Virus record (IMG/VR): IMGVR_UViG_3300033159_000002
Coordinates: 1-50,004 of that record
Reading direction: 5' to 3' (one strand)
DNA: 50,004 nucleotides
The notes beneath the pieces are model-generated. The model was given only the letters and a program-made list of their open reading frames with translations. It searched no databases and was not told the origin of the DNA. Shown here one piece after another: positions 12,131-44,008 of this stretch (its first letter is position 1; the number at the start of each line of letters is the position of its first letter). A program made the position numbers and the translations under genes.

Positions 12131-12410
12131 TCCTCCTCACCTCCTTAATTTCCATTAAATTCTTTCTGTAAACATTGTATAACTCATTTACATGATGACA
12201 TAAGAAGCCGTGGGCTCCAGCTTCACATGAGCAGGAGAAGCGGATCCAGCCATTATCAATAATAATCTCTGTGTGGTGGTATGTAGTCGGCCTAGAGCTA
12301 CTAGCTACGTCTCCGCTTACCCTAATTATTCCATGCTCGTCCTCTTCAATAAGGATTATTTTGACTTTCTTATCGGGTGATATGTATACGTAATTAGCAG
12401 TAGTGCTCAT
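12123..12410 (-). CDS. SWIM zinc-finger protein
   Basis: FSCSCEAG..FLCHH (CxC-xn-CxH). Confidence 0.8.
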   Translation of the reverse strand: MSTTANYVYISPDKKVKIILIEEDEHGIIRVSGDVASSSRPTTYHHTEIIIDNGWIRFSCSCEAGAHGFLCHHVNELYNVYRKNLMEIKEVRRNG

Positions 12411-16754: not shown

Positions 16755-16927
16755 TTTTTATGGAGAGAAAGGAGGGCTTTTTCATTTGATCTCCTTCCTT
16801 GAGCAATAAGTATTGGGCCTCTGCTACTTACAAAAGAGGGGGTTAAAGGGGTTGAAAGCCCCTACCCTGGAAGAGTGGGATGAAGTCAGATCTGCTAGGT
16901 TAAGAGAACAAATGGAATCCTTACTTG

Positions 16928-16959
16928 TTTCCTAATCAGTTAAACAAAAAGTTTAAATA
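16928..16959 (+). promoter_or_regulatory. Conserved early-type promoter TTTCCTAA-N16-TTTAAA (copy 1 of 6)
   Basis: Also at 24506-24540(-), 24586-24617(+), 25138-25169(+), 25811-25842(+) and 27017-27048(-), with fixed 24-nt spacing. Confidence 0.85.
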
Positions 16960-16992
16960 TAATTCAACAAAAGGTATAATAGGGGTCAAAAG

Positions 16993-18993
16993 ATGGCGGG
17001 TAACCTCCAAGAGAATTTCCAAAATCAAGAGTTTCCAAGTCTAAAACAAAAAGTCCAAGGATTCATAGAAAGTTTAGGAAATATAGAGTGTAGCGAAGGT
17101 AGCTATAATGACGAAGAGTATGGTCTTAACGGTTACTACTACTACTGTGAATCTCAGAGTAAATGGTTTACTCTTATTATAAATGACAGTGGCGTATACA
17201 TCAGGACACCATTCCATTTTTCAAAATCTGAACAAGTAATATCAAAGCTCTCGAAAGTATTTAATATAAACCTCAATAAACTAAGATTTTCACAACTAGG
17301 TTTCTTCCGTTTATTTAAGCTAGAACCTTTACCTGACGAAATAATTAACCTTAACTTAACTACTGATGATGATGAAATAGACCTTTCTACTACTACAAAC
17401 AACAGAATTTTAATAGATGTCATGGATAAGATTTCCCTCTTATACGACAAAGGAACAAAGAAATTCATCATTTTAAGTATAAAGAACTGGGAAACATACG
17501 AAAAAATTAGAGATTTTATAGACCATGACGTTAGAGAAATACTTGATAAATTATTATCATCAAAACCAGAATTTATCGTAAGAACGGCTTATGGTGAAGA
17601 ACTAGGATTAGAAGGGAAAAGGAAGGAAATCACGTTGAAGTTATTAAGTAAGTTAATGCCAATTGTTAATAAAATCAATAAAATAGAGATAAGAATTAAT
17701 GAAAATGAGAATGAAGTGATCCTAAACGATATAGTACTAGGACTAAAGGACGAAAACTGGGGAGATATACCTATTGATGTAATCGAAAAATTACTGACGC
17801 TTAAAAACACCGCAGTTATTGAACTTCATAAGGACTTTTGGTTCATTAAAGTACATTATAACCATTTGCTAGAAGTTGCTAATATACTAGGGATTGATCC
17901 GATGCAGACGATACACGATATAAATCCTAGGAAGGAAAGTCTATTGGTTTATGAGCCTAGAGATTATTATATATTTTCCGATGGTTGTGGTGGAGATTAC
18001 TACCATATAGTCCCGTCCAAAAACCTCCAAAAATATTTGCAATTATTAGGAGTTAATATCACACAAACTAGAGCTGATGGTTTTGAAATTAATGATGATT
18101 ATAAGTACGTTATAATACAAGGACAGAGTGATGAAATTCATGTTGGAGTTTACAAAGAGAATAAGCTCCTAACATCCTTGAAAACATATCTGTGGTATTT
18201 TGGCGTGAAGGACTTTAGTGAACTCAAAAATCTCAATAAAGAGAAAGTTATAGATATAATTAATAGACAGATCAATGAAAGGTACTTCTATCCTATGCCG
18301 TTTGACCAGGTCAAACAATACGTTGAGAAGTTTCTTGATACTACCATCAAAGTTATCGATGAGACGATTGGTTATGTAAGGGACAAAGTCCTAGATTTTA
18401 CATCACCGATTAAGGACATTGCTGAGATTAACTGTATATTCGATAAGGACTGTGAAGTCGCATTAGAACTAGATGAACAGGATAGGTTATCATCCTACTA
18501 TTCCTTAATCAGCACAAATGAGGGTCATATGCCTGTACCGATTTTCTTAGAGTATGCTGGGTTATGTGGACGTTATTCAGATGATGAAGACGATATAAGT
18601 ATGGTAAAGAATATGTTATACTTCATTAGGGGTTACGATAAAGTAATTTCGGAGTACGAGAGAGATTATAGTTCAATTGGCGACGATGTGAGGGGAGCGG
18701 TGTCAGAATTATTCCAGAAAGCTGTAGTGTTGTACAACAAGTTACTGCAGAATAAAAATAACTTACCTCACCCAGAAGATGATGAGGATTATGAAGAATA
18801 TGAATGCCCACAACATACTTTGCCAGATGGGATGGGATACTGCCGCAAGTTTGACTATGAACCACTAATGAAAAAGAGTGAGGAAGAACTGGCAAATGAA
18901 ATTATACAATCACTTACCGAAATAAGGGACAAAATGACTAGAATAAGGGAGAAATTGTTAAAGTCTGACTCTGTGCCTGTTATTGAGACATAA
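16993..18993 (+). CDS. Large acidic hypothetical protein (666 aa), early regulon
   Basis: Long ORF with conserved promoter and GGGGT RBS. Confidence 0.85.
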   Translation: MAGNLQENFQNQEFPSLKQKVQGFIESLGNIECSEGSYNDEEYGLNGYYYYCESQSKWFTLIINDSGVYIRTPFHFSKSEQVISKLSKVFNINLNKLRFSQLGFFRLFKLEPLPDEIINLNLTTDDDEIDLSTTTNNRILIDVMDKISLLYDKGTKKFIILSIKNWETYEKIRDFIDHDVREILDKLLSSKPEFIVRTAYGEELGLEGKRKEITLKLLSKLMPIVNKINKIEIRINENENEVILNDIVLGLKDENWGDIPIDVIEKLLTLKNTAVIELHKDFWFIKVHYNHLLEVANILGIDPMQTIHDINPRKESLLVYEPRDYYIFSDGCGGDYYHIVPSKNLQKYLQLLGVNITQTRADGFEINDDYKYVIIQGQSDEIHVGVYKENKLLTSLKTYLWYFGVKDFSELKNLNKEKVIDIINRQINERYFYPMPFDQVKQYVEKFLDTTIKVIDETIGYVRDKVLDFTSPIKDIAEINCIFDKDCEVALELDEQDRLSSYYSLISTNEGHMPVPIFLEYAGLCGRYSDDEDDISMVKNMLYFIRGYDKVISEYERDYSSIGDDVRGAVSELFQKAVVLYNKLLQNKNNLPHPEDDEDYEEYECPQHTLPDGMGYCRKFDYEPLMKKSEEELANEIIQSLTEIRDKMTRIREKLLKSDSVPVIET

Positions 18994-19020
18994 GGTGGTG
19001 ATAAAAAAGGGGGAAGAAGG

Positions 19021-19575
19021 ATGAGTTACAAATTACAGATCCAATTAAAAGATGAAAAATATCCATATTTCGAGGATAAAGTATTAGACATTACCAATAT
19101 CGGTTTTAGAGCTAAAGGCAGGATAATTTATATTAGCGGAAGGTTTGTACAGAATGGAGGAAACGGTGAAAAATTCGTGGTGTTTGAGAGAATCAGTCCT
19201 ATTGCGCTAAAACTAGTAAACGCAAAGATAACACAAACTGAAAAAGGAACATTGATAATAAAATATGAACCTAATGCTGTATTATATATCATCGAAATTC
19301 CAAGCGGTTACAGAGGAGACGTTGAAACTCAAGTGAGCGGCGAATGCACCAAGACTGTGGTATTACGGTCACCTGCTGGGAGTCTAGGTTATGTTGACCA
19401 TATCTGGTGTAATGGAAACGCTGAAATCCAGTATAAAATTTCAGGCAGGACAAGAACTGCTGGATATGGTCGTCTCATTGACTATTTCGGTGAAACTCTT
19501 AGCGGAAAAATAATAGTCAAAGACGGTAAGGTCGAAATAATTTATGATGAGCAATTAGACCAATTGTTAAGCTAA
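19021..19575 (+). CDS. Beta-rich hypothetical viral protein
   Basis: SGYRG and RSPAGSLG motifs; RBS present. Confidence 0.8.
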   Translation: MSYKLQIQLKDEKYPYFEDKVLDITNIGFRAKGRIIYISGRFVQNGGNGEKFVVFERISPIALKLVNAKITQTEKGTLIIKYEPNAVLYIIEIPSGYRGDVETQVSGECTKTVVLRSPAGSLGYVDHIWCNGNAEIQYKISGRTRTAGYGRLIDYFGETLSGKIIVKDGKVEIIYDEQLDQLLS

Positions 19576-19610
19576 TAGTTATTTTTTCTTCTCTAGTTTT
19601 TCGATAAGCT

Positions 19611-20150
19611 TTATAGGGAGAACGAGGAGGATTCAAGGAAGCAATTAATCTTTGAGAAATATAACCTCTCGTTTTTGAAAATGTTAGCTAGCACCCTGTA
19701 CAGATCGGCGAGGGAAAACCTATAATGTGGGTATATTAACTCAGCGTTATAATATACTGCGCATTCACCGAACTCATCCTTAAAAAACGAAGGTAAGACG
19801 GGTACATTCCCAAACGTTATTGCAGCATATATGTACCCTACGTTTATCCCTTCCTCCAAATAAATGTACCAGTTGCCTAAAAAAAGCGCATTAGGGTTCA
19901 TCACTACATACGGTTTTTTGACAGGTGCCATCACATTATTTGCCCACTTCTTCAACGCTTCTGTCTTCGCGTCTTCTGACACGATATAAGCGTTAATAAA
20001 CGATTTCGGTAATATGTCGACGACTGGCGGGACGTACTCTTTTCCCTCCCTTTCCGCAATTATTTTTGAGATTGTAACCTTCTGCGGCTGACCGTTCTTA
20101 TAAGCAAATTCTCCCTTAAGTACTTTCTCAACAACGTCCTTAAACATCAT
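19611..20150 (-). CDS. Hypothetical protein
   Basis: Last gene of the leftward operon. Confidence 0.7.
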   Translation of the reverse strand: MMFKDVVEKVLKGEFAYKNGQPQKVTISKIIAEREGKEYVPPVVDILPKSFINAYIVSEDAKTEALKKWANNVMAPVKKPYVVMNPNALFLGNWYIYLEEGINVGYIYAAITFGNVPVLPSFFKDEFGECAVYYNAELIYPHYRFSLADLYRVLANIFKNERLYFSKINCFLESSSFSL

Positions 20151-20928
20151 CGAACCTCTCTACCTCTTCATCATTTTGATTAAACCTCTGTATTCTTTCC
20201 TCAACAATTCTCCTCCTCTTTTCCATCATTTCATTCCAGATCTCGTCTGGCATCCTCAGGTTCTTTATATAGTAAAACATCACTGGAGTATCGATCTCCT
20301 TTAGCGTCCCAGAACGGGTTGAAGCAACTTCCCTCCTGGTGAAAATTACCTTCCCCTCCTTTTTTACTTGGACTCTCCATGTTGCGATGTCCCGGAAGAA
20401 CTTTGCCACTCCTATGAGCCTAGGGACCGTGAAAATTATGAGCGATATGAAGTCCTTAACATATACGAACGCATCAAAGAGCTCAAGCATCTTCCTCTTC
20501 TCTGCAGCACTCCTCATGTTCCAGGTCGATGATAGCCCTACTGCAGAGGGGTCGTCGAAAAGCACAACGTCATAACGTTGTCTGTTCTTTATATTCTCCA
20601 GTAGTTGCTTTAGGTCGTCAATGTCAAATACCACTCTCTTCCTAACTTCTTTTACGTCTTCAAACACGTAAAGCATCGACTGGATAACATAGCTGGTCTT
20701 ACCGCTCCCTGGCTCACCGTAAACAATAATCTCGTCATGTGTGTAGTAGTCTTTCTGTTTGACAGCATTGCTTATGAACCACACTAGGGGATTATAATGG
20801 AAATCGTTGGCTAACTGTGCTAGGGCACTCCACCCTTCTCCCCTGGTCTGTGGGACCATAATTTTCTGATAAATCGGGAGTAGCACCTTATAGTAACTCT
20901 GATAGTCTTCTAATCTCATCATAACCAC
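20140..20928 (-). CDS. P-loop NTPase (possible packaging or fusellovirus B251-like ATPase)
   Basis: Walker A GEPGSGKT, Walker B VVLFDD. Confidence 0.85.
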   Translation of the reverse strand: MVMMRLEDYQSYYKVLLPIYQKIMVPQTRGEGWSALAQLANDFHYNPLVWFISNAVKQKDYYTHDEIIVYGEPGSGKTSYVIQSMLYVFEDVKEVRKRVVFDIDDLKQLLENIKNRQRYDVVLFDDPSAVGLSSTWNMRSAAEKRKMLELFDAFVYVKDFISLIIFTVPRLIGVAKFFRDIATWRVQVKKEGKVIFTRREVASTRSGTLKEIDTPVMFYYIKNLRMPDEIWNEMMEKRRRIVEERIQRFNQNDEEVERFDDV

Positions 20929-21085
20929 CTAAACATTCGACGAGTTTGCTCTTTCTCCTTTCGCCAGTTTCTAGGAATAATATAATGTGGTTGATCTCCT
21001 CGTCGTTAATATAATCTATGCATTCCTCCTTCATTTCGTCAACCAGCAGGCGCTCCAGTATCCTTCTTGTTTTTTCTTCCTCCAT
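20888..21085 (-). CDS. Small hypothetical protein
   Basis: Overlapping operon member with RBS. Confidence 0.55.
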   Translation of the reverse strand: MEEEKTRRILERLLVDEMKEECIDYINDEEINHIILFLETGERRKSKLVECLGGYDEIRRLSELL

Positions 21086-21353
21086 TTTTCGACCCCCTTT
21101 CCTTATTAGTTTCCGCCCTTTTAGGGCGGGGAGCCACCAGTTTTGTCACTCTTAATATCCTTATTAATACTAGGAGGAAAACTATGCTGCTTATTGCGAG
21201 GGATGTAAAATTGTTATACAAGTAGGAGAGAACGACCATTGCCATACTCAGCACTGCAAATAATAATTCGAAGTTAACAGTAGTTAGGTATCGGTTCTCT
21301 GCAATAACGTAAACTATTAGGAGCGCTGCAGAAATAAATTCGAGTATCACCAT
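21039..21353 (-). CDS. Small 3-TM membrane protein
   Basis: Three hydrophobic segments and a basic tail. Confidence 0.7.
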   Translation of the reverse strand: MVILEFISAALLIVYVIAENRYLTTVNFELLFAVLSMAMVVLSYLYNNFTSLAISSIVFLLVLIRILRVTKLVAPRPKRAETNKERGSKNGGRKNKKDTGAPAG

Positions 21354-21718
21354 ACGTTGACACCAAGATTTGGATAGATAACGCTCTCGCTCACTGCGAT
21401 TTCGCTAAGTACCTCAATTAGTAATGTTAAGGTCCTTTCCATGTAATCGTCAATACTTTCTCCTTCTTTTCTTTTAAGCTCCCTCAGTATTTCGTTTATA
21501 CCCTTTCCTAGTTTTTTCGTGATGTAATCTGTTCTATCCATATGCATCAGCAAGGATTCGGTTGCGCTTACAACTGCAAGGAATGCAGCTTTGCGCTGCG
21601 GAAAGGCTATGCTGTAGTTATTAACCTCATGGATTATCTTGTTGAGAAGATGGGTGGCGAACTCCCTGTAGGTCCTTAACGGTGTTAACTCTATCCCTGC
21701 ATCTATTCCGCTTGACAT
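21347..21718 (-). CDS. Hypothetical protein
   Basis: Operon member. Confidence 0.65.
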   Translation of the reverse strand: MSSGIDAGIELTPLRTYREFATHLLNKIIHEVNNYSIAFPQRKAAFLAVVSATESLLMHMDRTDYITKKLGKGINEILRELKRKEGESIDDYMERTLTLLIEVLSEIAVSESVIYPNLGVNVW

Positions 21719-22086
21719 TCCTCAACCCCGTCTACTGCGAGTAGGTAAATGTTACTGTTCTTCCCTTTCATCATCTTTATGCACTTCAGCCTGCTTAGTA
21801 TAAGCTTTACACGTTGCTTGACTTCCTGCGAGAGTGCCTCGTTCAGTTTCGTGTATAGTACTACGTCATCTTCGTCATAATAAACGTCAAAAGGGTATGA
21901 AAGGATAATGGGGGGTGACACAACACGTTTAGCCTTAACGTTCTTTAGTAGTGCTATAGCTTTTACAGAATGTATGTTACCGTACAGAATTGCAGCGTTT
22001 TCATGTGTCTCGTACTGCGTAAGATAGTTAAAGAGTTTAGTGGGAGTGTATTGCGCTTTAAGTAATGCCCTGTACTTTTTTATCAC
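21703..22086 (-). CDS. Hypothetical protein
   Basis: Operon member. Confidence 0.65.
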   Translation of the reverse strand: MIKKYRALLKAQYTPTKLFNYLTQYETHENAAILYGNIHSVKAIALLKNVKAKRVVSPPIILSYPFDVYYDEDDVVLYTKLNEALSQEVKQRVKLILSRLKCIKMMKGKNSNIYLLAVDGVEECQAE

Positions 22087-22418
22087 TTAATCTCAGCCTC
22101 CAACCACTTCTCTATAGCTTCATTACTTTTTGCAGGGACAACCGCACCGTAGTTATCGTTCTCGTTAAGCTTTTGTATAAAATAGTATTTTATCTCAGGC
22201 ACTTTGGACCAGAGCATCCTAAATCTCTCAGCAGTGCCCGACAGTATTTCTATTACTTCGTATTTATTATAACTTAGTATTTGCATGTTTATCTCTCCTA
22301 TGCTACACAAGACTGTGCGCCAGATCGGCAGCGATGTGTCTGCATATAGTATTATCGCTGACGCTTTTTTGATCTTATCTAGGAATTCTTGTTTCGAATT
22401 TACAATTAACCTGTCCAT
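22083..22418 (-). CDS. Hypothetical protein (leaderless start at 22418)
   Basis: CTAACATTTTTCTTATT promoter identical to the one upstream of 44854. Confidence 0.65.
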   Translation of the reverse strand: MDRLIVNSKQEFLDKIKKASAIILYADTSLPIWRTVLCSIGEINMQILSYNKYEVIEILSGTAERFRMLWSKVPEIKYYFIQKLNENDNYGAVVPAKSNEAIEKWLEAEIK

Positions 22419-22465
22419 ATGAAGCAAAGAAGGTATAATAAGAAAAATGTTAGCATGAACATGAT

Positions 22466-22960
22466 TTAGTAGTTTTTCCGAATCTTCGGATACCCAAAAT
22501 ATTCATGATACTTTTTATAGACGTAATTTAGGATTTCTTCTCTACTCTTCCTAACCCATTCTCTGAAAAACACCTCAACTTCCTTTTCCTGTTCCTCAGG
22601 CTTAAACTCATCTTTTAAAACATAATTCCTTATGTACCCTATTGTTGCCCCGCTCAGCGGATCTCTTACTTCTTTCTCCTCTTGAATGTCAACCTCTCCT
22701 GTTTCGATTAGTCTATCGATGTAATCTTGCAGTTTTGATGAATAAGGACCGAAGAACCAGGGCTTAAAATTCAGTCCTAGATTAATTCCCTTCTCTTTCT
22801 CTAACAAAAAGAAAATCTTCTGCAGTTTGGTCGGAGTGACCTTTGCATTCTCCTCTTTTGCGATATAAAGCAGTAATTTGATTAAACGATAAATTCTGTC
22901 ATCGATTAACATGACCAACCCTAATATTAAAGTATATAGAGTGCATAAAAAGAGCACCAT
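22466..22960 (-). CDS. SocA/Panacea (DUF4065/YwgA)-like antitoxin-domain protein
   Basis: TPTKLQKIFFLL...FKPWFFGPYS signature. Confidence 0.7.
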   Translation of the reverse strand: MVLFLCTLYTLILGLVMLIDDRIYRLIKLLLYIAKEENAKVTPTKLQKIFFLLEKEKGINLGLNFKPWFFGPYSSKLQDYIDRLIETGEVDIQEEKEVRDPLSGATIGYIRNYVLKDEFKPEEQEKEVEVFFREWVRKSREEILNYVYKKYHEYFGYPKIRKNY

Positions 22961-23264
22961 CCTTATAGCCCAAACCCCCTCCTTCTACCTCTCCTTTTCA
23001 TCATTTTTTCTTTCTACGTATCTCTGAGGTCGCGTAAAGATATGGAAAAAGAGTTCCTAATACTAACAAAAATATAAGAATAAGCAGGATTATTGCTGAG
23101 ATCTGTTGCATGTTATAACTTAGCCTACCCTGTGTTTATAAACTTTCTGAGAAGAGCTAGGAATGTCAAATAATATCACATGACATAAAATTCACGACTT
23201 ATCGGAAACTTTTGACGACGGAAAGTTAGTAAGCTATTAAGCAGTTCTAATTAATGTCTATATC

Positions 23265-23368
23265 TTTTCTTACTTCGCACTTTTGCTATATAATAGCACC
23301 TCGAACTTTTCCCTATTTTTCTCGCCCCTTTTTTGGTTTTATTAGCACGAAATTAAAACCACGTTAAG
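23265..23368 (+). repeat. Dispersed non-coding repeat, copy 2 (5'-truncated)
   Basis: TCGCACTTTTGCTATATAATAGCACCTCGAAC...GAAATTAAAACCACGTTAAG. Confidence 0.85.
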
Positions 23369-24200
23369 AACCGATGTACTCTTACAACTAAACATTGCTA
23401 GAAGACGGATATTAGCACGTTAGGAACTCCTAAATGTCACATACAGCAAAATAATTACTTTGAATTTTTCTCAGTAAACTAGGGAGTTTATACAATTTTT
23501 AAAAATAGGAATAATAGTTATAAGATAGAGTAATAATAAGTGTCTAGTATCCTTCTCGACTTGATTCTATTTTATAGGATTATATTTTTCCTTAGATCGT
23601 TCAAACAAAAATCAATTATTAAATTAATTAAGAATTCAAAAGAGAATGAAGGAAGTACCGCCGTTTATTTTTGTTATTTTACGTCGAATTCATAAGGATA
23701 TATTGATAAGGGTTGCAGCTGTGAAATAAAATCAATAAACTCCCCAGTTTACCGCAAAAAATTGCAAAAATAAAATCATGTATCTATCAATTTCAAACTC
23801 AGATTTTCTAATAGGTCCATGAATTAAAATTTGAAAAACAAGCCATGATTCTTTTATAAATTGTAAACCTAAGTTAGGTCTATATAGCCGTATACAGACG
23901 TAAATTAGGTTCTGACTTTTTTGAAAGACGTTGCTGTTATAAATTCAAAAAATAATACGTAGCCCTCTCAAAAATTCTAAGGAGCTATTAGGGAGCTTCT
24001 AAGAAAATTTAGTGTTATATGCGCTACTAAGGTGCTGTATGCAGCAACAGCAGCAAAAGAGCTCCACGGATTAATCTTTGAGAGGGATTATTTGACAGAA
24101 CATTGAGAAGGAAACCACTTGAAATGAAAGTATAGTGGCAAACGGGAATTAGGAGATAAGAAATAGCACAAACGGAAAAAATTAGGAAAGGAATAAAAAA

Positions 24201-24470
24201 TTAGGACTTACTTGGAACCAAGAACCAAATCGTAGTTCCAGTATCAATTTTTTTGACAGCAAGTCTTGCTATCTCATCAGTACCAGCGCAAATATACTCG
24301 TCCATCGGGATTGGATAGCACCCGTTCCCCACTGGTATCCATTCAAAATGATTACAACTGTCAGCTCTAACTTCTGCACCGTTCCTATATTCTATATATA
24401 ATATTTGTCCGTCTGCTGAACACTTGAAAATTACTTGATCCTGTTGTAGTTCCCTTATGACTTGTGCCAT
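24201..24470 (-). CDS. Cys/His protein, early regulon; remote paralog of 10881..11225
   Basis: Start revised using the promoter and RBS; SCNHFEW..C..C..LVP. Confidence 0.7.
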   Translation of the reverse strand: MAQVIRELQQDQVIFKCSADGQILYIEYRNGAEVRADSCNHFEWIPVGNGCYPIPMDEYICAGTDEIARLAVKKIDTGTTIWFLVPSKS

Positions 24471-24654
24471 CTTTTTCATCCCCATAATAATGTTTGTTGA
24501 ACTAGGATTTAAACTTTTTGGTAAATAAGTTAGGAAACAACTTCCCTTCATTTTTAGCTGCGGTTCATGATATCCTCCCTTATTATTTCCTAACCAGTTG
24601 ACCAAAAAGTTTAAATACCACTTCAATAAATGGTATACGTGGGGGTAAAAAGAT

Positions 24655-24978
24655 ATGGTAAAAAGAGAGGAAAACCCACCTCATGAAGATTTTGAGACAC
24701 TGAAGAGCGCCTTAAGGGAGGTATTAAAGGAGTACTTTGAACTCTATTTCGGTCCTCCTAAGACAACAGAGGATTTGGACAGGGTTTACGACTTTGTTAA
24801 GGACGATCTCGGCATGGCGTCAATCAAGGACATTAGGGAACAGATGGGTATGACCCTGGAACAATTCATGGCTAAGTTCCGTGATTACATAATTAGAAAT
24901 TACGAATTAATCTCGGGAGGAAAGGAAGGGATTGTAAAGGGCGGAGTGCTTTACGGCATAATTAGGAGGAGGAAATGA
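24655..24978 (+). CDS. Hypothetical protein, early regulon (possible HTH)
   Basis: Conserved promoter; ASIKDIREQMGMTLEQF. Confidence 0.75.
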   Translation: MVKREENPPHEDFETLKSALREVLKEYFELYFGPPKTTEDLDRVYDFVKDDLGMASIKDIREQMGMTLEQFMAKFRDYIIRNYELISGGKEGIVKGGVLYGIIRRRK

Positions 24979-25204
24979 TATCTGATTAAAATTTTTTGCA
25001 AAATTCTCACTTTTTTCCCTAACATCAGCGCCGTTTTAATCTAATTTTGTTATTATACAACACACTTTCGTTTCCATGCTAGTTTTCTTATTCAGTATAT
25101 TATTAGTTGTAGTTACTCTAATACTCTCCCTTATTTGTTTCCTAACCTGTTTTGCAAAAACTTTAAATACTTGTTAAACAGAGAGTATAAATAAAGGTGA
25201 AAAA

Positions 25205-25480
25205 ATGGTTAAACTCCAAAACTCTATATGTGATAAAATCCTTGAAGTTATTCCTAAAGAGTTAGATAACATATATACAATTGAAGAAAAACTTGAGTCA
25301 ATTGGAATAAGCGTAAAATTTATAAATCGTGAGCACATATTCCCATATGCCTATTACCACTATTTACTTTACAATAAATATGTTCTACATCTTTTTTTCA
25401 AACAGGGGATACTAAATTACATAGCTATCTATGAAGAAAGACCAGAGAAAAAATTTTATGTTTGTGAAAAATCTTTATAA
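25205..25480 (+). CDS. Hypothetical protein, early regulon
   Basis: Conserved promoter and AAGGTGA RBS. Confidence 0.75.
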   Translation: MVKLQNSICDKILEVIPKELDNIYTIEEKLESIGISVKFINREHIFPYAYYHYLLYNKYVLHLFFKQGILNYIAIYEERPEKKFYVCEKSL

Positions 25481-25875
25481 TAAAAATTACGTTTTTTTAA
25501 GCTTAAACTAAATCATTATACTGTTTAAGTTAATCTCCCTTTCTCTTTAAATCCTAATCTAAGGCTGTTTATTCTTCCGTTCTTATCATATGCTATAGAG
25601 TTTTCAATTGTTAAGTAAGCAGTGGGAAGCGCTACTCATGGGATCCCAGCTTTCTATGCTCATTAGAAAAATTCAATAAACTCCCCAGTTTACCGCAAAA
25701 AATTCAAGTCAATTCTGCGCTTGAGGAACCTTTGCGCTACATGTGCAAAAAATGGGCCAGCGGTGAAGGCGAATTATATTAATATAATAACGAATAATTG
25801 TTCGTATTTATTTCCTAACTAGTTGGTAGAAAAGTTTAAATATTGGTTTACCAAAGAATATTATGGGGATAAAAA

Positions 25876-26316
25876 ATGGCGGGGGAAAACAATCAAATAC
25901 AACAAGATCAATACACTTTTTTAATATACAGCTATCATACGTGGGGTTCATTCGGACAGCACGAGAAAGTTATGAAGTTTCTCATTGATATCGACAATAA
26001 ATCACAAAAACCCCTTTGGGAAGTAGTTGTTAACGTTAAATGGTCAAATAACGACAACAGAAAAAACAAACACAGAGAAGCATATGTAAAAGAAGAAGAC
26101 ATTATGAATCTTAAAGGAAAAATCTTAAAAGAAGTAAGAGATTACCAGAGTTCCTCAAAGAAGGAAATAAGTGTAAAATATTATATTATTTCTGATAATG
26201 GTATGCAGGAAATTAAAGCAGAAACAGGAGTAAAAATAAACGGCAAATATTATGATATTATAGAATTCAACGGCAAAAAAATTATGGTTAATAAAGATGA
26301 GATAATAGTACAATAA
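25876..26316 (+). CDS. Hypothetical protein, early regulon
   Basis: Conserved promoter and RBS. Confidence 0.8.
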   Translation: MAGENNQIQQDQYTFLIYSYHTWGSFGQHEKVMKFLIDIDNKSQKPLWEVVVNVKWSNNDNRKNKHREAYVKEEDIMNLKGKILKEVRDYQSSSKKEISVKYYIISDNGMQEIKAETGVKINGKYYDIIEFNGKKIMVNKDEIIVQ

Positions 26317-26551
26317 CGTTGTTAGCGCTGCAATATTTTTATTTCTTTAGGAGGAGAACTACTACCTTTTCATCCACTTTTCCTGCCTAAGTTAAGAGGA
26401 TCAATAGAATCTCTTTCTAAATGAGTCGCTCACTCTCTAAATATTTAGCCAATTAATATCACCTGTCTAAAGTCGATTAAACTGTAGCTGTAAAAAGTAT
26501 TAAGTAACTGATAAGAAGAGATAAATGGAAAAATAATGGACTTTTAAAAAA

Positions 26552-26995
26552 TTATTGAGATATAAGATCTTGATCTTCGACATAATGAAACAGCGGCAAT
26601 TCGTTTTTGTTGTTTAATAACAACGATTGAATATTTTTTGGCAACCTAGTCAGTAACATTTTTTGTTCTTTTCCTTCATATAATTTCCATTCTTGTAGTA
26701 CCTTCATCTCGCCATTAACTTCAACAACTCTTACTGTTATATAGGTATTGCCAAGATTACTTCTAGTCACACTGTAAACTAGGTATCTTCCAGGCAACAA
26801 TGCATATGATCGTACTCCGTGACTACCAGTTCTACTTGTATGCAGCTTAGACTTTATTATTTTTCCTGTCCTGAACGAAATTATAATAGTGTCGTCTCTA
26901 GCTCCCATACCAGTCCTCTTGTAACTAAAACTGAATATTTTGGGTCGAGTTTGTGTTGAGGTTTTGTTTTCTTCCACCAACTTTTCCACCTTCAT
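26552..26995 (-). CDS. Basic beta-rich hypothetical protein, early regulon
   Basis: Conserved promoter; SRTGSHG..YALLPGRY motif. Confidence 0.8.
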   Translation of the reverse strand: MKVEKLVEENKTSTQTRPKIFSFSYKRTGMGARDDTIIISFRTGKIIKSKLHTSRTGSHGVRSYALLPGRYLVYSVTRSNLGNTYITVRVVEVNGEMKVLQEWKLYEGKEQKMLLTRLPKNIQSLLLNNKNELPLFHYVEDQDLISQ

Positions 26996-27333
26996 ATATA
27001 ATGTTTGTTGAACTAGTATTTAAACTTTTTGCAAAATAAGTTAGGCAATAATTAAGTGATTGATTCTTAATCTAGTTAAAGCTTTGATAGGTCCATCTGT
27101 TTTAATCTGAGGACCATTAAAAAAACTGCAAGCGTCAAGGTGGCGGGAAGAAGGATAAGGTCCTACAGCTGCTGGAGTTGTTTCTCTTCCGGCCTGAAGC
27201 GAAACCCAGTGGGGTTTTAAAGTTTCTCTTTAGAAGTATAAGACGGGAAAAAGCGAAATGGGAAATAAGAGGGATTTAAGTCAATTTCCTAAGAGCCAAA
27301 TTCAATTTTTTACAACCTATTGTTATAATACAA

Positions 27334-27585
27334 ATGAGGTGGCAAAAAATGAGTAAAAATACATATTATATATATAAAATTACACTTGATGAGTATACAA
27401 CATACAATATTTGTGTTCCTAAAGATCAGATAGAAGAATTTGAACAATGGAAAGAGACAAAAGACGTGATTATCTCTGATTGGGTTGGTGAGACTGACGA
27501 CGATGCTGTATGTTGTACTGTATTCGATCACGGTTACGAGTTTCCTGACGGATGTGACAACCCATTATATCTAGAAGAGGAATGA
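27334..27585 (+). CDS. Acidic Cys-containing small protein
   Basis: First gene of the rightward operon. Confidence 0.65.
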   Translation: MRWQKMSKNTYYIYKITLDEYTTYNICVPKDQIEEFEQWKETKDVIISDWVGETDDDAVCCTVFDHGYEFPDGCDNPLYLEEE

Positions 27586-27594
27586 GGTGATAAC

Positions 27595-27918
27595 ATGAAA
27601 TATTTATGGCAAATTGTTAGAAAATTACAAGAAAAAGACGAACTAAATGAGGAAGAATGGAAAGACCTAATTGACTATCTAAACGTCTTGAAAGAGGGGT
27701 TACAGAAGCTTAGAATTATATTGTACAATGATTATGTGAGGTATATCGTCGATTTTGACGTGGTATTTAAAGATCCCTGGTATGTTTCTGAGGTGCGTTT
27801 AAAATGTTTGGAGATAGAGGGAGGATGCGGATTTCTCTATCTAGACGACTTCTTATGGAGAATATTCACAGATCAAATAGAAGTAAAGCCTTTCATAAGC
27901 GAGGTGACTGACCAATGA
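27595..27918 (+). CDS. Hypothetical protein
   Basis: RBS GAGGTGA; CLEIEGGC. Confidence 0.7.
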   Translation: MKYLWQIVRKLQEKDELNEEEWKDLIDYLNVLKEGLQKLRIILYNDYVRYIVDFDVVFKDPWYVSEVRLKCLEIEGGCGFLYLDDFLWRIFTDQIEVKPFISEVTDQ

Positions 27919-28220
27919 TTTTCAATTCATCTACTGTACAAAAATACATTTTGAATGGCGCTAAAGCAGTCGCGACAATTAGGAAGGCTGGTTATTATGA
28001 GTTAGGTAAGAGGGTTGTAATGAAAGTTGGAGACAGGAGATTTTATGGTAAGGTTGTTGCAATAGCCCCTGTCAAATCCTCCTACCTAAGAGAGTATGTC
28101 GACTATAGCGGGTTTCAAAGCGTTGAGGAATGGGTAGCGGAAGCCGAGAGGATCTATAAAGCCAAGATAGACCCCAACAAATTTCAAATAATTGTTGTGG
28201 TGATTCACCGTGGTCTATAA
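27915..28220 (+). CDS. ASCH/PUA-like domain protein
   Basis: ILNGAKAVATIRK...GKRV...YSGFQSVEEW. Confidence 0.7.
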   Translation: MIFNSSTVQKYILNGAKAVATIRKAGYYELGKRVVMKVGDRRFYGKVVAIAPVKSSYLREYVDYSGFQSVEEWVAEAERIYKAKIDPNKFQIIVVVIHRGL

Positions 28221-28767
28221 TAAGTATAATGAAATTATAGAGCATTTGAGAGAAGCGAAAGTCGATTTAGGAAATGCTGTACTTACTATTATGGATAGGA
28301 TTAACAAAATTATAGAACATCATAATGAAAATTTTGATAAAGAACAATTTGACGAATTACAGTTTCTCGAAAAGAAACTAGAGGAAATTAAAGAAATAAG
28401 AGGAGAGATAGACGACATTATCTTAGACCTCCAAGATCCTTCAAGATCCTTAGTTGACCAGCCCATTATTTTCGACTCGCCTTATGTACAGAAGTATATC
28501 ATGAGCGGAGCTAAACTCGTAGCAACAATTATGAGGACTGGCTATTATTACATAGGCAAGAAAGTTACGATGAAAGTTGGAGATAAGGAGTTCTACGGCA
28601 AAGTTGTTGCAACAAAACCCCTTAACCTTTTCACATTAAGTGAGTATGTTAACTATAGTGGTTTTGGTGGCGTCTGGGAGTGGTTGTTTGAAGCTACTCA
28701 GCAGTATAAAGCTGCAATGAATCCCGATAAATTCGAAATAGTTGTCATTGAGGTGGATCGCAAATGA
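28210..28767 (+). CDS. Coiled-coil plus ASCH-like domain protein (paralog of 27915..28220)
   Basis: C-terminal ~100 aa are clearly similar to the preceding ORF. Confidence 0.75.
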   Translation: MVYNKYNEIIEHLREAKVDLGNAVLTIMDRINKIIEHHNENFDKEQFDELQFLEKKLEEIKEIRGEIDDIILDLQDPSRSLVDQPIIFDSPYVQKYIMSGAKLVATIMRTGYYYIGKKVTMKVGDKEFYGKVVATKPLNLFTLSEYVNYSGFGGVWEWLFEATQQYKAAMNPDKFEIVVIEVDRK

Positions 28768-29198
28768 AGGTCGCAATATGGATTTCCAGGGAGAAAATAT
28801 TGCCAGTCCAGTGGAAGTTGCTGAAGGACGCTGGCTATAATATAATAGTATATAATAAAGGAATATACAATGTCGAGGACTTTCTAGACGAGGTAAAGAA
28901 CTTAAATAAGGAAATATATGAAAGAGTCTTGCTAATCCCAGTAGTCCCAGAAAGCGTGAAGATGAAACTTCTAGAGGAGATTAGGAATCGTAACCTAAAA
29001 TTTGAGGTCGTAGAACCAGTAATGAAGGAAATAGGAAGATACGATAACGAGGTACTGTGCAAAATGCAGCTATCGCAGAACCCAGACAGCAGAGTCACAG
29101 TGAAGCTTAAGGACGGTACGTGTAAAGTATACGAATTCGTAGAGTTCAAACGTCTAGTTGAATACGTTAAGCGCTATGATGAAGGGTGGTCACTATAA
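28764..29198 (+). CDS. Hypothetical alpha/beta protein
   Basis: Operon member; WISRE..Q..L and IPVVP motifs. Confidence 0.7.
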   Translation: MKVAIWISREKILPVQWKLLKDAGYNIIVYNKGIYNVEDFLDEVKNLNKEIYERVLLIPVVPESVKMKLLEEIRNRNLKFEVVEPVMKEIGRYDNEVLCKMQLSQNPDSRVTVKLKDGTCKVYEFVEFKRLVEYVKRYDEGWSL

Positions 29199-29215
29199 GA
29201 TGAACAATACTAGAG

Positions 29216-29446
29216 GTGATGAAAGTGGAAGAAGATTGGGAAGAAGAAAACGAAATGGATCTCTATGAAGAAGATGATGAGGAAGAGCTAGAAAACATAG
29301 AGGATGAAGTAGATGAGATCTGCAGGAGGGTAACGAGTTGTGAGGACTGTCCATGGGAGGTATGCGGGGATTTGTGCGAAATCATTTGCGAGGATGAGGA
29401 AGAGGAATTGGAAGAGGACATGGAGGATCTCTATGAGGAGGAGTGA
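29216..29446 (+). CDS. Extremely acidic Cys-cluster protein
   Basis: More than 50% D/E; C-x5-CxxC-x4-C-x3-C-x3-C. Confidence 0.7.
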   Translation: MMKVEEDWEEENEMDLYEEDDEEELENIEDEVDEICRRVTSCEDCPWEVCGDLCEIICEDEEEELEEDMEDLYEEE

Positions 29447-29464
29447 AATAAATGGGGAGGTAAA

Positions 29465-30055
29465 ATGATTGAACTTAAGGAAATTTATAAAATACGCCCT
29501 AAAATAATCCCTAAGAACATCATTTACACTATTGACAGTTACGCTGAGAAGCAGTCGATTAGGATGTCGGTGAAATACGCAAGAGTAGACGAGGACTTAG
29601 GCTGGAAAGTGCCGTTGGTCTGGGATTATGACGACCTAAAGAAAATTAAGGGATTTGATAAGCTTATAGAGATCGTCAGTGGCAAGAAAGTGATTGAAAT
29701 AGGAGGAGGTAACGGATATTTAGCCTATATATTGTCGCATTATGCCAAACATGTAGACACATTTGAGGGTTGGTCTCCTTATGCAGTGGTTTATAGTAAT
29801 TATATATTTCCAGAGGTGGTAAGAAAGGAACTTAGCCTCAACTACATTATAAGATACGTAACAGAAGATGATTTGCAGTATTTAGGTAGGTATGACGTTG
29901 GAATTTATTCTGGACTAGATAAGTACAGCGAAATTCTAAGCATGCTCAGCAAGGTCTCAGAGAACGTTATATGGATAACGTTTTGCAACGTAAAGGAGAA
30001 AGACAAAATTAATACTGATATTGACGTTTGTATGTTCAATCTGAAGAGGGAGTAG
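29465..30055 (+). CDS. Class I SAM-dependent methyltransferase
   Basis: KVIEIGGGNGYLA motif I; VDTFE motif II. Confidence 0.8.
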   Translation: MIELKEIYKIRPKIIPKNIIYTIDSYAEKQSIRMSVKYARVDEDLGWKVPLVWDYDDLKKIKGFDKLIEIVSGKKVIEIGGGNGYLAYILSHYAKHVDTFEGWSPYAVVYSNYIFPEVVRKELSLNYIIRYVTEDDLQYLGRYDVGIYSGLDKYSEILSMLSKVSENVIWITFCNVKEKDKINTDIDVCMFNLKRE

Positions 30056-30113: not shown

Positions 30114-30842
30114 ATGGACAAGGATGAACTTAAGCGAATAATACTAGAACTTCCCGATAACTCACCGAAGTTGTTGGAGTATTTGAAAGAAGCTAAGGAG
30201 AAAGGATGGACTGATGTTATCGATATGATTGCCGTGAAGTTAGGACTAAAGGAGGCGAAGAAGAAAGGAAAGAGAGAGGAGAGCGAGTTACTTAAGAAGA
30301 TTCTGAAGCCACTGGGCAAAAAGAAGATAGAACATAGTTGGGACTATTCGGTTGATTTTCTCGAAGCCAAGAAAGTCCTCACTAACGCTTACAAACAGCT
30401 ATTTGATCTCAATCTGATGCCCTATGAGGCTTATGTGGCAATTCTCTTGATACAGCTGATTAACGGTGCTAGAATTAAAGAAGCGATCAGAGCGTTCAAA
30501 ACATTCGTGGAATCAAATCAAAGGGAGTTCCAACTAAAAGCAGAAAAGCATGGCAACATAAGGTTCTTCATTATTCCTGAGGTCATTAGAAACAGACTAG
30601 CGTATAAATCGATACTGACAATTGATGATGATAAACTAGAAGCGAGGATAAGGATGTTTGCACGGAAGTACTTGAAGTGTAATACGCATTCGCTACGATA
30701 TGCACTGATCTCCTTTTTGGCAAAAAATGCAACAGATCCAGCACTTATCGCGAAAATAACTGGACATAAGAAGTTGGACAGAATTGTACAGTATACACAG
30801 ACGAAAGACGCGATTGAAATCTTACGTAAACTGGGGAGTTAA
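30114..30842 (+). CDS. Tyrosine recombinase (Xer/integrase-like, minimal)
   Basis: NGARIKEA (R), AEK (K), HSLRY (HxxR), TGHK (H) and QYT (Y) catalytic set. Confidence 0.9.
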   Translation: MDKDELKRIILELPDNSPKLLEYLKEAKEKGWTDVIDMIAVKLGLKEAKKKGKREESELLKKILKPLGKKKIEHSWDYSVDFLEAKKVLTNAYKQLFDLNLMPYEAYVAILLIQLINGARIKEAIRAFKTFVESNQREFQLKAEKHGNIRFFIIPEVIRNRLAYKSILTIDDDKLEARIRMFARKYLKCNTHSLRYALISFLAKNATDPALIAKITGHKKLDRIVQYTQTKDAIEILRKLGS

Positions 30843-43813: not shown

Positions 43814-44008
43814 TTAGGGCGAGGAGGAGTCAGAACCTCCTATAACCCTTGCTAATTCTGATTTTTCCTTAGAGATAAAGCCCCTTGCAAGGGCCTGCTT
43901 CATTAAAAAAACTATAGCTTCTTGTCTTGATTCCCATCCTTCAGCTTTCCACATACTATCAAATTGTTGAAGGATGCGTTCATCTATATTCAAGCTTATT
44001 CTAGCCAT
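43814..44008 (-). CDS. RHH (NikR/CopG-like) regulator
   Basis: MARISLNIDERILQQFD...SRQEAI. Confidence 0.85.
   Translation of the reverse strand: MARISLNIDERILQQFDSMWKAEGWESRQEAIVFLMKQALARGFISKEKSELARVIGGSDSSSP

What the first reader, a model, noticed from the sequence alone, without database searches (positions are those of the whole stretch)
16928..27048. Six-gene regulon with a shared TTTCCTAA box and strong BRE-TATA: candidate anti-defence genes
Seen: TTTCCTAA (TTGCCTAA in one copy) starts exactly 24 nt before TTTAAA, preceded by an A-rich BRE, upstream of 16993, 24470(-), 24655, 25205, 25876 and 26995(-). Most of these are short unknown proteins in an accessory region. Known: archaeal viral anti-CRISPR and anti-defence genes tend to share conserved strong early promoters. 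Inference: these are immediate-early genes, good candidates for new Acr or anti-defence proteins; the box is probably an operator or activator site for one of the viral RHH/wHTH proteins.
Basis: partly seen in the sequence, partly recalled or inferred. Interest (0 to 1): 0.7.

Follow-up and report, generated by a model that had tools for sequence, protein, structure and literature searches.

The report
Shared early-promoter cassette on viral accessory genes
Six accessory transcription units of a 50-kb hot-spring archaeal virus carry the same ~75-base promoter/operator cassette, a published signature of candidate anti-defence genes, and one unit is a freshly captured half of a host gene paired with an ATPase.

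Summary
TTKCCTAA-N16-TTTAAA occurs six times in the window, with none expected by chance. The six sites are the window's only strong BRE-TATA promoters of this type.

The box is the left edge of a ~75-nt cassette. The cassette holds two AC-NN-GTT cores 24 nt apart that flank the BRE and TATA box. A putative initiator and a GGTGA ribosome-binding site follow, and the cassette ends at the start codon.

The window is a complete circular genome (127-bp terminal repeat) of a relative of Sulfolobales virus YNP1 (SYV1). SYV1 has four near-identical cassettes in the syntenic place. They precede gp38-41, which Bhoobalan-Chitty et al. 2024 list as anti-defence genes ADG.74-77. The kind is therefore known, and so is this motif lineage.

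What I add:
- The cassette occurs at 178 distinct sites in 83 hot-spring metagenome loci, ahead of 36 unrelated protein families.
- Divergent cassette pairs keep a 49-51-nt spacing.
- The cargo includes an ADG.06 homologue.
- The cargo also includes a 107-aa protein about 95% identical in DNA to the 3' half of a host gene that overlaps an AAA ATPase gene.

Early timing, anti-defence activity and the identity of the regulator remain untested.

The parts
16918..16992 (+). Cassette 1. Box 16928-16935, BRE CAAAAAG 16945-16951, TATA 16952-16959, then the downstream core and a short leader that ends at the ATG.
   Evidence: Its PWM score is the lowest of the six (50 bits), because TAAT replaces TAAC and there is a 1-nt deletion after the TATA box.
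16993..18993 (+). 666-aa cargo protein of unknown function.
   Evidence: It belongs to a family of 47 clusters at 46-82% identity, all from metagenomes and with no Pfam domain. The AlphaFold model is confident (pLDDT 85), but nothing in PDB or BFVD matches at E<=0.001. It shows no similarity to AcrIIIB1 or to any phage record.
19021..19575 (+). 184-aa second gene of the operon, a member of family ADG.06.
   Evidence: It is 74% identical to SIRV4 gp48 and matches phrog_13554 at 1.6e-95. SIRV4 gp48 is listed as ADG.06 and lies next to an AcrIIIB1 homologue. It starts 27 nt after the upstream stop codon with its own ribosome-binding site, and a T-tract follows its end.
24471..24547 (-). Cassette 2. 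Box 24530-24537, TATA 24506-24513. It forms a back-to-back pair with cassette 3.
   Evidence: The two box starts are 49 nt apart, the same spacing as in SYV1 (23105-/23154+) and L021 (50 nt).
24201..24470 (-). 89-aa cysteine-containing cargo protein.
   Evidence: It is 43-49% identical to SYV1 gp37, the gene downstream of ADG.74. Homologues occur in 15 motif-bearing loci. It has no Pfam, PHROG or PADLOC hit.
24576..24654 (+). Cassette 3. Box 24586-24593, TATA 24610-24617.
24655..24978 (+). 107-aa cargo protein. It is a captured C-terminal half of a host two-domain wHTH-like protein and is related to the ADG.51-type proteins.
   Evidence: It is 47% identical to an ATV2 protein and 43.5% to the ARV3 ADG.51 region. 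It is 94% identical in protein and about 95% in DNA to codons 72-178 of a chromosomal gene of a Sulfolobus sp. MAG. That host gene overlaps the start of a 455-aa AAA_22/STAND-like ATPase gene.
25128..25204 (+). Cassette 4. Box 25138-25145, TATA 25162-25169.
25205..25480 (+). 91-aa cargo protein, nearly an orphan.
   Evidence: It has one homologue among the motif loci (L049, 92%) and no family hits.
25801..25875 (+). Cassette 5. Box 25811-25818, TATA 25835-25842.
25876..26316 (+). 146-aa cargo protein of a strongly conserved virus-only family.
   Evidence: 14 distinct homologues lie behind cassettes at 66-78% identity. The family has 42 clusters, all from metagenomes and with no Pfam domain. 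A PDB sequence search found nothing.
26981..27058 (-). Cassette 6. Box 27041-27048, TATA 27017-27024.
   Evidence: It is 91% identical to cassette 2 over 54 nt.
26552..26995 (-). 142-147-aa cargo protein, a beta-sandwich followed by two helices.
   Evidence: 12 distinct homologues lie behind cassettes at 50-74% identity. The model has pLDDT 86. The best PDB match is AFV1 ORF157 (3ii2; E 7.8e-4, TM 0.40). In other viruses this gene is paired head-to-head with the 146-aa family; here the two genes converge.
43814..44008 (-). 64-aa ribbon-helix-helix protein, a candidate regulator that lies outside the finding's coordinates.
   Evidence: It is 62-72% identical to SYV1 gp53, which is listed as ADG.78 'ADa' with a NikR-like DNA-binding region. 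It is present in the window, SYV1, L134 and L116 and absent from SYV2. It has its own, different promoter, shared with SYV1 gp53 and gp59.

Best explanation
The six sites are copies of one promoter-operator-leader cassette of about 75 nt. The cassette puts seven otherwise unrelated accessory genes of a SYV1-like spindle virus under common, strong transcriptional control. It is an 'anti-defence regulon' of the kind described for Sulfolobales viruses.

What the sequence shows:
- The core is a canonical, strong host-type BRE (CAAAAAG) and TATA box (TTTAAATA).
- Two short palindromic cores 24 nt apart bracket it. AAC-NN-GTT overlaps the upstream edge of the BRE. TAC-NN-GTT lies between the TATA box and the start site.
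- A conserved AGTATA-N-TTG follows, about 26 nt from the centre of the TATA box, and then a GGTGA-type ribosome-binding site and the start codon.

What I infer:
- Host TBP, TFB and RNA polymerase fire these promoters as soon as the genome enters the cell.
- A dimeric virus-encoded repressor then occupies the two cores and shuts the promoters off by excluding TFB and TBP. The best candidate is the gp53-like RHH protein, though this is not settled.
- The cargo proteins act on host defences. For one of them a concrete mechanism can be proposed. The 107-aa protein is a truncated copy of the small wHTH partner of a host AAA ATPase (a suspected abortive-infection or toxin-antitoxin pair). It would act as a decoy or surrogate antitoxin.
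For: - The motif is statistically real and coincides exactly with the only strong BRE-TATA promoters in the genome.
- The cassettes are alike while the cargo genes are unrelated.
- SYV1 has homologous cassettes in the syntenic position between the gp43 homologue and the integrase, upstream of gp38-41 = ADG.74-77.
- Both published selection criteria are met.
- The cassette occurs at 178 distinct sites in 83 metagenome loci, ahead of 36 protein families. Almost none of these families has a known domain.
- Conservation is position-specific. Outside the BRE and TATA it peaks at TAAC(5-8), GTT(11-13), C32, GTT(35-37), CAAA(41-44) and G55.
- The downstream GTT was not part of the search pattern. It is present in 60% of raw pattern matches, against 1 of 20 chance matches.
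- 28 of 31 divergent pairs are spaced 49-51 nt apart.
- The cargo includes an ADG.06 homologue and the host-derived 107-aa protein. Its homology starts about 8 nt before the ATG and ends about 12 nt after the stop.
- The accessory region has lower G+C (0.34) than the core genes.
- T-tracts follow each unit.
Against: - There are no expression data for this uncultured virus, so 'early' rests on analogy with SIRV2.
- No cargo protein is homologous to an experimentally proven Acr.
- The 666-aa cargo is far larger than typical Acr proteins.
- None of the full-length DNA-binding proteins (two RHH, MarR-like wHTH, coiled coil) is itself under the cassette, unlike Aca8 in rudiviruses. The only cassette-driven protein with a wHTH-like part is the captured host fragment.
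- The two cores show no covariation that would tie them to a changing regulator.
- The phyletic argument for the RHH rests on a handful of genomes.
- The cluster lies next to the integrase, so functions in lysogeny or superinfection exclusion are not excluded.
Confidence: 0.6

Rival explanations
1. The cassettes are simply strong constitutive promoters. Their likeness comes from recent duplication and recombination among accessory genes. No dedicated regulator exists and no temporal class is implied.
For: Some cassettes in the window are very alike: 91% over 54 nt for cassettes 2 and 6, and 81% over 78 nt for cassettes 4 and 6. The two cores show no covariation. No DNA-binding gene sits under the cassette apart from the captured host fragment.
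Against: Across 160 distinct sites from diverged viruses, conservation is concentrated at specific positions outside the BRE and TATA, while neighbouring positions vary freely. The spacings are fixed: 24 nt between cores and 49-51 nt between divergent boxes. The downstream core is enriched independently of the search pattern.
Confidence: 0.15
2. The cassette marks promoters that are read with the virus's own TFB homologue (9874-10884, minus strand). On this reading it is a virus-specific middle or late class, not immediate-early.
For: The window encodes a TFIIB/TFB homologue (Pfam TFIIB 1.5e-25 plus Zn ribbon). SYV1 does too.
Against: SYV2 also encodes the TFB homologue (60% identical), yet it has only one degenerate cassette (13 bits). 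The BRE and TATA are the canonical strong host type, also found in SIRV2 early promoters, and SIRV2 has no TFB. The TFB gene lies in the conserved core module, not with the accessory cluster.
Confidence: 0.1
3. The regulon is real, but its cargo serves the carrier or lysogenic state or competition between viruses (superinfection exclusion, host take-over, copy control) rather than inhibition of host defence.
For: The cluster lies in the variable region next to the integrase (30114-30842) and the replication module. The most widespread cargo families (146 aa and 142-147 aa) are strongly conserved at 50-78% identity, which is unlike fast-evolving Acrs. The best structural match of one of them is AFV1 ORF157, which I recall was described as a nuclease.
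Against: Two cargo genes belong to, or resemble, published ADG families. One is a truncated copy of a host partner of an ATPase, which is hard to explain except as interference with that host system.
Confidence: 0.15

Closest known systems
Anti-defence gene (ADG) regulons defined by conserved regulatory sequences in archaeal viruses (Bhoobalan-Chitty et al., Nat Commun 2024, PMC11065993), specifically SYV1 ADG.74-77
   Same: A strong BRE plus TTTAWATA promoter is embedded in a virus-specific conserved sequence. It stands upstream of small, mostly single, unrelated accessory genes. The SYV1 cassettes score 65-74 bits with a matrix built from both genomes. They lie at the syntenic locus and include the same 49-nt divergent pair.
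   Different: This genome is not among those analysed in the paper, and the accessory region has no nucleotide match in the phage collection. Only one cargo gene is shared with the SYV1 cluster (gp37-like). The cassette here also drives a 666-aa gene. The paper gives no architecture for the SYV1 motif in its text. I derived the two-core layout, the metagenomic spread and the 36 cargo families here.
Aca8-controlled early acr genes of SIRV2 and other rudiviruses
   Same: The logic is the same: a strong early promoter is shared by acr and accessory genes and is presumably repressed later by a small DNA-binding protein.
   Different: No Aca8 homologue was found by tblastn of all window ORFs against SIRV2 at E<=0.01. 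The flanking sequences differ: SIRV2 has A/G-rich GAGATAAAAAG-type repeats upstream, not AC-NN-GTT cores. The regulator gene here is not under the cassette.
ADG.51 (arCOG03737) viral copies of the small partner of a host AAA-ATPase/nuclease pair (SiRe_2374/SiRe_2373)
   Same: The 107-aa protein aligns with the ATV2 and ARV3 proteins (47% and 43.5%). Its host homologues of 175-188 aa sit immediately upstream of an AAA ATPase gene.
   Different: Here the viral copy is 94% identical in protein and about 95% in DNA to a host gene, so the capture is recent. The copy corresponds to the host protein's C-terminal half (residues 72-178), whereas the paper describes the viral homologues as retaining the N-terminal wHTH domain. 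I could not confirm a PD-DExK nuclease domain in this host ATPase.
Bacterial acr-aca operons with Aca repressors
   Same: A strong promoter for rapid anti-defence expression is combined with operator repeats that overlap the core promoter.
   Different: The promoter architecture is archaeal. The units are many dispersed monocistronic ones rather than a single operon. No regulator is co-encoded in the units.

Membership tests
ADG regulatory-sequence regulon (PMC11065993) | A predicted strong promoter: purine-rich BRE directly upstream of a TTTAWATA TATA box | tested here: met
   All six sites have [CG]AAAA[GC] followed by TTTAAAT[AC]. They are the only RAAANTTTAWAT matches in 50 kb.
ADG regulatory-sequence regulon (PMC11065993) | A conserved regulatory sequence around the promoter, shared by several genes of the same genome | tested here: met
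   The conserved block is 72-78 nt at 65-91% identity, and 38 columns are invariant across the six copies.
ADG regulatory-sequence regulon (PMC11065993) | Genes are single units, small, poorly conserved and without annotation | tested here: met
   Five units are monocistronic (89-147 aa) and one is bicistronic (666 + 184 aa). There are no Pfam domains above threshold. The 666-aa gene is atypical.
ADG regulatory-sequence regulon (PMC11065993) | Transcription immediately after infection | not testable with these tools
   The genome is an uncultured metagenomic one (IMG/VR contig) and no transcriptome is available.
ADG regulatory-sequence regulon (PMC11065993) | Demonstrated inhibition of a host defence system | not testable with these tools
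   The evidence is indirect only: ADG.06 and ADG.51-type homology and host-gene capture.
SYV1-type cassette lineage | Sequence homology of the whole cassette, and the same genomic position | tested here: met
   SYV1 sites 22596-, 23105-, 23154+ and 23607+ align over the full cassette. They lie between the gp43 homologue and the integrase, as in the window.
Aca8 regulon (rudiviruses) | An Aca8 (SIRV2 gp01/gp54) homologue is present and preceded by the motif | tested here: not met
   No window ORF hits SIRV2 gp01 or gp54.
AcrIIIB1 | Sequence similarity to SIRV2 gp48 or SIRV4 gp49 | tested here: not met
   The 666-aa protein against SIRV4 gp49 gives a best E of 0.05, and it has no tblastn hit in any phage record. 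No window ORF hits SIRV2 gp48.
AcrID1 | Sequence similarity to SIRV2 gp02, gp03, gp10, gp45 or gp46 | tested here: not met
   No window ORF hits these genes.
ADG.06 | Homology to SIRV4 gp48 (YP_009362966) and relatives | tested here: met
   The 184-aa protein is 64-74% identical over 95-100% of its length to 16 rudivirus records. It matches phrog_13554 at 1.6e-95.
ADG.51 / arCOG03737 | Homology to ARV3 gp05 and the ATV2 protein, and to host proteins encoded next to an AAA ATPase | tested here: met
   The nuclease domain of the host partner was not confirmed.
AcrIII-1 / DUF1874 ring nuclease | DUF1874 (STIV B116-like) domain | tested here: met
   This applies to a gene outside the regulon, 12407-12763(-): Pfam PF08960 at 1.2e-20, 38% identity to SIRV2 gp37, and PADLOC Csx16 at 2.9e-8. 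It has no cassette, which fits the low motif prevalence reported for acrIII-1.

The most novel reading that the evidence does not exclude
The ~75-nt cassette is more than a shared promoter. It is a portable capture-and-express joint. Because the same sequence ends at the start codon of 36 unrelated gene families, recombination at cassettes lets hot-spring spindle viruses swap cargo and plug in freshly stolen host genes. One such event is visible in this genome: the 3' half of a host gene that overlaps an AAA ATPase gene is fused to a cassette within about 8 nt of an internal Met codon. That would identify both a new archaeal abortive-infection-type system and its viral decoy. It would also give archaeal viruses an integron-like platform for anti-defence genes.
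Probability: 0.3. Interest if true: 0.7.

Novelty: new member of a known kind. Interest (0 to 1): 0.45.

Why it matters
The cassette gives a sequence-only handle on a large pool of candidate anti-defence proteins of Sulfolobales viruses. I found at least 36 families, nearly all without known domains. They include a confidently folded 666-aa protein with no structural relative.

The recent host-to-virus capture gives a direct, testable pairing between a viral gene and a suspected host defence module, a wHTH protein plus an AAA ATPase.

The two-core operator layout defines what to mutate and what to use as bait when looking for the regulator.

This extends a published discovery principle. It does not establish a new one.

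Tried and rejected
- Nucleotide search of 16-28 kb against the phage and plasmid collections found no match, so the accessory region is not in any deposited genome.
- The Rfam and tRNA scans of the window found nothing.
- A search of the paper's supplements for the box sequence found it is not written out there.
- I tested whether the 666-aa protein is the reported AcrIIIB1 fusion. No similarity was found.
- A PDB sequence search and Foldseek against PDB and BFVD for the 666-aa model gave nothing at E<=0.001.
- Mutual information between the two cores and within the palindromes showed nothing beyond neighbouring-position effects. Covariation therefore neither supports nor contradicts a common binder.
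- A genome-contig scan for integrated copies returned chance hits only, in unrelated bacteria and archaea.
- I looked for a DNA-binding protein among the cassette-driven families. One of the 33 representatives had an HTH_45 hit and none was an RHH.
- The phyletic profile for a regulator gave two candidates present in the window and SYV1 and absent from SYV2: the gp53-like RHH and an 86-aa ZapB/bZIP-like coiled coil. There are too few complete genomes to decide between them.
- The largest downstream 'family' from BLAST clustering turned out to be two groups joined by one chimeric member, so I split it.
- The TTTCCTAA at 27285 lacks the BRE-TATA and does not score, so it is not a seventh site.

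Full report
**Observation.** The pattern TTKCCTAA-N16-TTTAAA matches six times in the window, with box starts at 16928+, 24537-, 24586+, 25138+, 25811+ and 27048-. None of 100 shuffles gave a match. The octamer alone is only mildly enriched, 13 against 6.1 expected. The same six places are the only matches in 50 kb to RAAANTTTAWAT, a purine-rich BRE abutting a TTTAWAT TATA box. An alignment of the six upstream regions shows that the box is only the edge of a longer conserved block. The block starts about 10 nt upstream of the box. It runs through CAAAAAG-TTTAAATA, a GTT-N3-CAAA element, GTAT-ATGGGG and a GGTGA-like ribosome-binding site, and ends at the start codon. The repeat finder reports the same 54-78-nt units at 65-91% identity. 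The coding sequences that follow are unrelated to one another.

**Units.** Five units are monocistronic and end in T-tracts. The first unit is bicistronic. The 666-aa gene is followed 27 nt later by a 184-aa gene that has its own GGTGGTGA and no promoter.

**What the window is.** The window carries an exact 127-bp terminal direct repeat, so it is a complete circular genome of 49,877 bp. It is IMG/VR contig 3300033159_000002. About half of it is roughly 80% identical in DNA to Sulfolobales viruses YNP1 (SYV1) and YNP2 (SYV2), which are unclassified relatives of the tailed spindle-shaped bicaudaviruses. The order of shared genes is preserved. The stretches 11.9-19.6 kb and 23-30 kb are specific to this genome, have no nucleotide match in the phage or plasmid collections, and have lower G+C. 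The main cluster (24.2-27.1 kb) lies between the homologue of SYV1 gp43 and the integrase. The sixth cassette, with the 666-aa operon, abuts the conserved replication module (DnaA-like ATPase).

**Comparison with what is published.** Bhoobalan-Chitty et al. 2024 (PMC11065993) showed that SIRV2 early genes, including acrID1, acrIIIB1 and aca8, share a regulatory sequence built around a strong BRE/TATA promoter. They used 'strong promoter plus shared surrounding sequence within one genome' to predict anti-defence genes (ADGs) in many archaeal viruses. They noted that the sequences flanking the core promoter are virus-specific and probably bind different repressors. SYV1 was among their genomes. 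Its gp38, gp39, gp40 and gp41 are listed as ADG.74-77, gp53 (an RHH) as the associated regulator ADG.78, and gp59 as ADG.79. A position weight matrix made from the six window sites finds exactly four strong sites in SYV1: 22596-, 23105-, 23154+ and 23607+. These lie directly upstream of gp38-41, at the syntenic locus. SYV2 has only one degenerate copy, next to its integrase. The window therefore holds a new instance of a known kind, in a motif lineage already flagged in its closest relative.

**Spread of the cassette.**
- 83 of those loci, all from hot-spring data sets, carry 200 matrix hits, of which 178 are distinct 66-mers.
- A third viral contig (L021/L061, 17.5 kb) has three copies.
- A scan of one genome per prokaryotic species returned only chance hits, so no integrated copy exists in those representatives.
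- The first ORFs downstream of the sites fall into 36 BLAST families. The largest family is really two groups linked by a chimeric member.
- Of 33 family representatives, one has a wHTH domain, one a DUF, and the rest nothing.
- All six window cargo genes have cassette-driven homologues elsewhere.

**Architecture.** Across 160 distinct sites the consensus is CTTAyTTG-TTTCCTAAC-ya-GTTaas-CAAAAAG-TTTAAATA-C-ya-GTTtAn-CAAA-n-AGTATA-n-TTG.
- The exact octamer TT[TG]CCTAA is present in only 39% of sites.
- The core AAC-NN-[AG]TT is present in 89% of sites.
- A second core, TA[CT]-NN-GTT, lies 24 nt downstream in 75% of sites.
- This second core was not in the search pattern. It is present in 60% of raw pattern matches, against 1 of 20 chance matches.
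- The two cores bracket the BRE-TATA. The first overlaps the upstream edge of the BRE, and the second lies between the TATA box and the expected start site.
- A conserved G lies 55 nt from the box start, about 26-27 nt from the centre of the TATA box. That distance is usual for a Sulfolobus initiator (established knowledge). It implies leaders of 10-14 nt that carry the GGTGA motif. This is inference.
- About 28% of sites form back-to-back pairs, and 28 of 31 pairs are spaced 49-51 nt apart. These include the window pair 24537-/24586+ and the SYV1 pair 23105-/23154+.
- Mutual information gave no covariation between the cores.

Operators that overlap the BRE and lie downstream of the TATA box are the classic positions for archaeal repressors. 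An immediate-early promoter cannot depend on a newly made viral activator. I therefore read the cores as shut-off sites rather than activator sites. This too is inference.

**Who binds.** The window encodes two RHH proteins (43814-44008-, 11605-11868-), a MarR-like wHTH (13801-14133), an 86-aa ZapB/bZIP-like coiled coil (11230-11490-) and a TFB homologue (9874-10884-). Two of these are present in the window and SYV1 and absent from SYV2: the RHH at 43.8 kb and the coiled coil. The RHH is the homologue of SYV1 gp53, the paper's 'ADa'. It also occurs in two further motif-bearing loci. It has its own promoter type, shared with SYV1 gp53 and gp59, not the cassette. This makes the RHH the leading candidate, but the evidence is thin. 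The TFB homologue is also present in SYV2, which argues against a TFB-specific promoter class.

**Cargo.**
1. *The 184-aa protein.* It is 74% identical to SIRV4 gp48 and relatives. These are listed as ADG.06. In SIRV4 the gene sits next to an AcrIIIB1 homologue.
2. *The 666-aa protein.* It belongs to a metagenome-only family of 47 clusters. It folds confidently (pLDDT 85) into repeated beta-sheet/helix modules. It has no significant match in PDB or BFVD, to AcrIIIB1, or to any phage record.
3. *The 107-aa protein.* It matches the ATV2 and ARV3 proteins of family ADG.51. The paper proposes these as viral copies of the antitoxin-like partner of a host AAA-ATPase/nuclease pair.
   - Its best homologues are 175-188-aa proteins of Sulfolobales chromosomes.
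   - One of them, in a Sulfolobus sp. MAG contig with ordinary metabolic genes, is 94% identical over the whole viral protein. It aligns from its internal Met72 to its C-terminus.
   - At the DNA level the identity is about 95%. It starts about 8 nt before the viral ATG, where the cassette ends, and stops about 12 nt after the stop codon.
   - The host gene overlaps the start of a 455-aa AAA_22/STAND-like ATPase gene, which has weak PADLOC hits to defence ATPases.
   - This is a recent capture of half of a host gene, placed precisely behind a cassette. It is the most concrete support for an anti-defence role in this window.
4. *The 89-aa protein.* It resembles SYV1 gp37, the gene downstream of ADG.74.
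5. *The 146-aa and 142-147-aa proteins.* They belong to the most widespread and best conserved cassette-driven families. In other viruses the two genes share a divergent cassette pair. Here they converge, each with its own cassette. The 142-147-aa protein is predicted to be a beta-sandwich with two C-terminal helices. Its best PDB match is AFV1 ORF157 (3ii2, E 7.8e-4, TM 0.40), which I recall was described as a nuclease.
6. *The 91-aa protein.* It is nearly an orphan.

No cargo protein resembles AcrID1, AcrIIIB1 or Aca8.

**Verdict.** The interpretation as a co-regulated set of candidate anti-defence genes is the best available reading. It agrees with a published, partly validated method, but it is a prediction. 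Timing, activity and regulator are untested. Relative to the literature this is a new member of a known kind. Four points are useful additions: the two-core operator layout, the fixed divergent-pair spacing, the metagenomic breadth of the cassette, and the recent host-gene capture.

Noticed in passing
window 3381, 11847, 13075(-), 14907(-), 15758, 16026, 16392, 23489(-), 23737, 25678, 30841(-), 37268(-), 48074, 48296: A second over-represented element, GTAAACT-CCCC-AGTTTAC, is a 7-bp inverted repeat around CCCC. It has 14 copies within 2 mismatches, against 0.04 expected. SYV2 has 15 copies and SYV1 has 1. Copies lie both between genes and inside them, including the 3' end of the integrase gene. 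A subset with extended conservation sits 40-75 nt upstream of gene starts. It may be the binding site of another viral DNA-binding protein.
   Followed up: partly
window 1-127 and 49878-50004: An exact 127-bp terminal direct repeat shows that the window is a complete circular genome of 49,877 bp. It is IMG/VR contig 3300033159_000002.
   Followed up: yes
window 9874-10884 (-): The virus encodes a homologue of transcription factor B (TFIIB repeats plus Zn ribbon). It is 67% and 60% identical to the SYV1 and SYV2 homologues.
   Followed up: partly
window 12407-12763 (-): This is a DUF1874 / STIV B116-like protein of the AcrIII-1 viral ring-nuclease family. It is 38% identical to SIRV2 gp37 and hits PADLOC Csx16. 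It lies in an operon without the cassette.
   Followed up: partly
window 44009-44060 (-); L001 upstream of 28547 and 33685: A second shared promoter type, CATAAGCTTTATATACTA, lies about 24 nt before the ATG, so the transcript is probably leaderless. It precedes the RHH gene here and precedes gp53 and gp59 in SYV1.
   Followed up: partly
window 22961-24200: This is a 1.2-kb stretch without convincing genes. It contains two inverted copies, 229 nt apart, of the extended GTAAACT-CCCC-AGTTTAC element (23463-23498 and 23728-23763). It could be a miniature inverted-repeat element or an origin-like region.
   Followed up: no
window 27915-28220 and 28210-28767: Two adjacent genes are both related to SIRV2 gp12 (58% and 48% identity). 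The second carries an N-terminal extension. They lie in a seven-gene plus-strand operon (27334-30055) that has no cassette.
   Followed up: no
L166 10001-11901 (Sulfolobus sp. MAG JAWDOM010000011.1): This host gene pair is the source of the captured viral gene. A 178-aa two-domain wHTH-like protein gene overlaps the start of a 455-aa AAA_22/STAND-like ATPase gene. HEPN, PIN and Mrr-like genes lie nearby. It also points to the likely host lineage of the virus.
   Followed up: partly
L021 6251(-)/6301(+), and L026, L064, L071: In other viruses the 142-147-aa and 146-aa families are transcribed divergently from one back-to-back cassette pair. In the window the same two genes converge, each with its own cassette. 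Promoter-plus-gene modules have therefore been reshuffled.
   Followed up: partly
window 11230-11490 (-): An 86-aa coiled-coil protein (Pfam ZapB 2e-8, weak bZIP) is present in the window and SYV1 but not in SYV2. The reference paper proposed leucine-zipper proteins as ADG regulators in SMV2.
   Followed up: no
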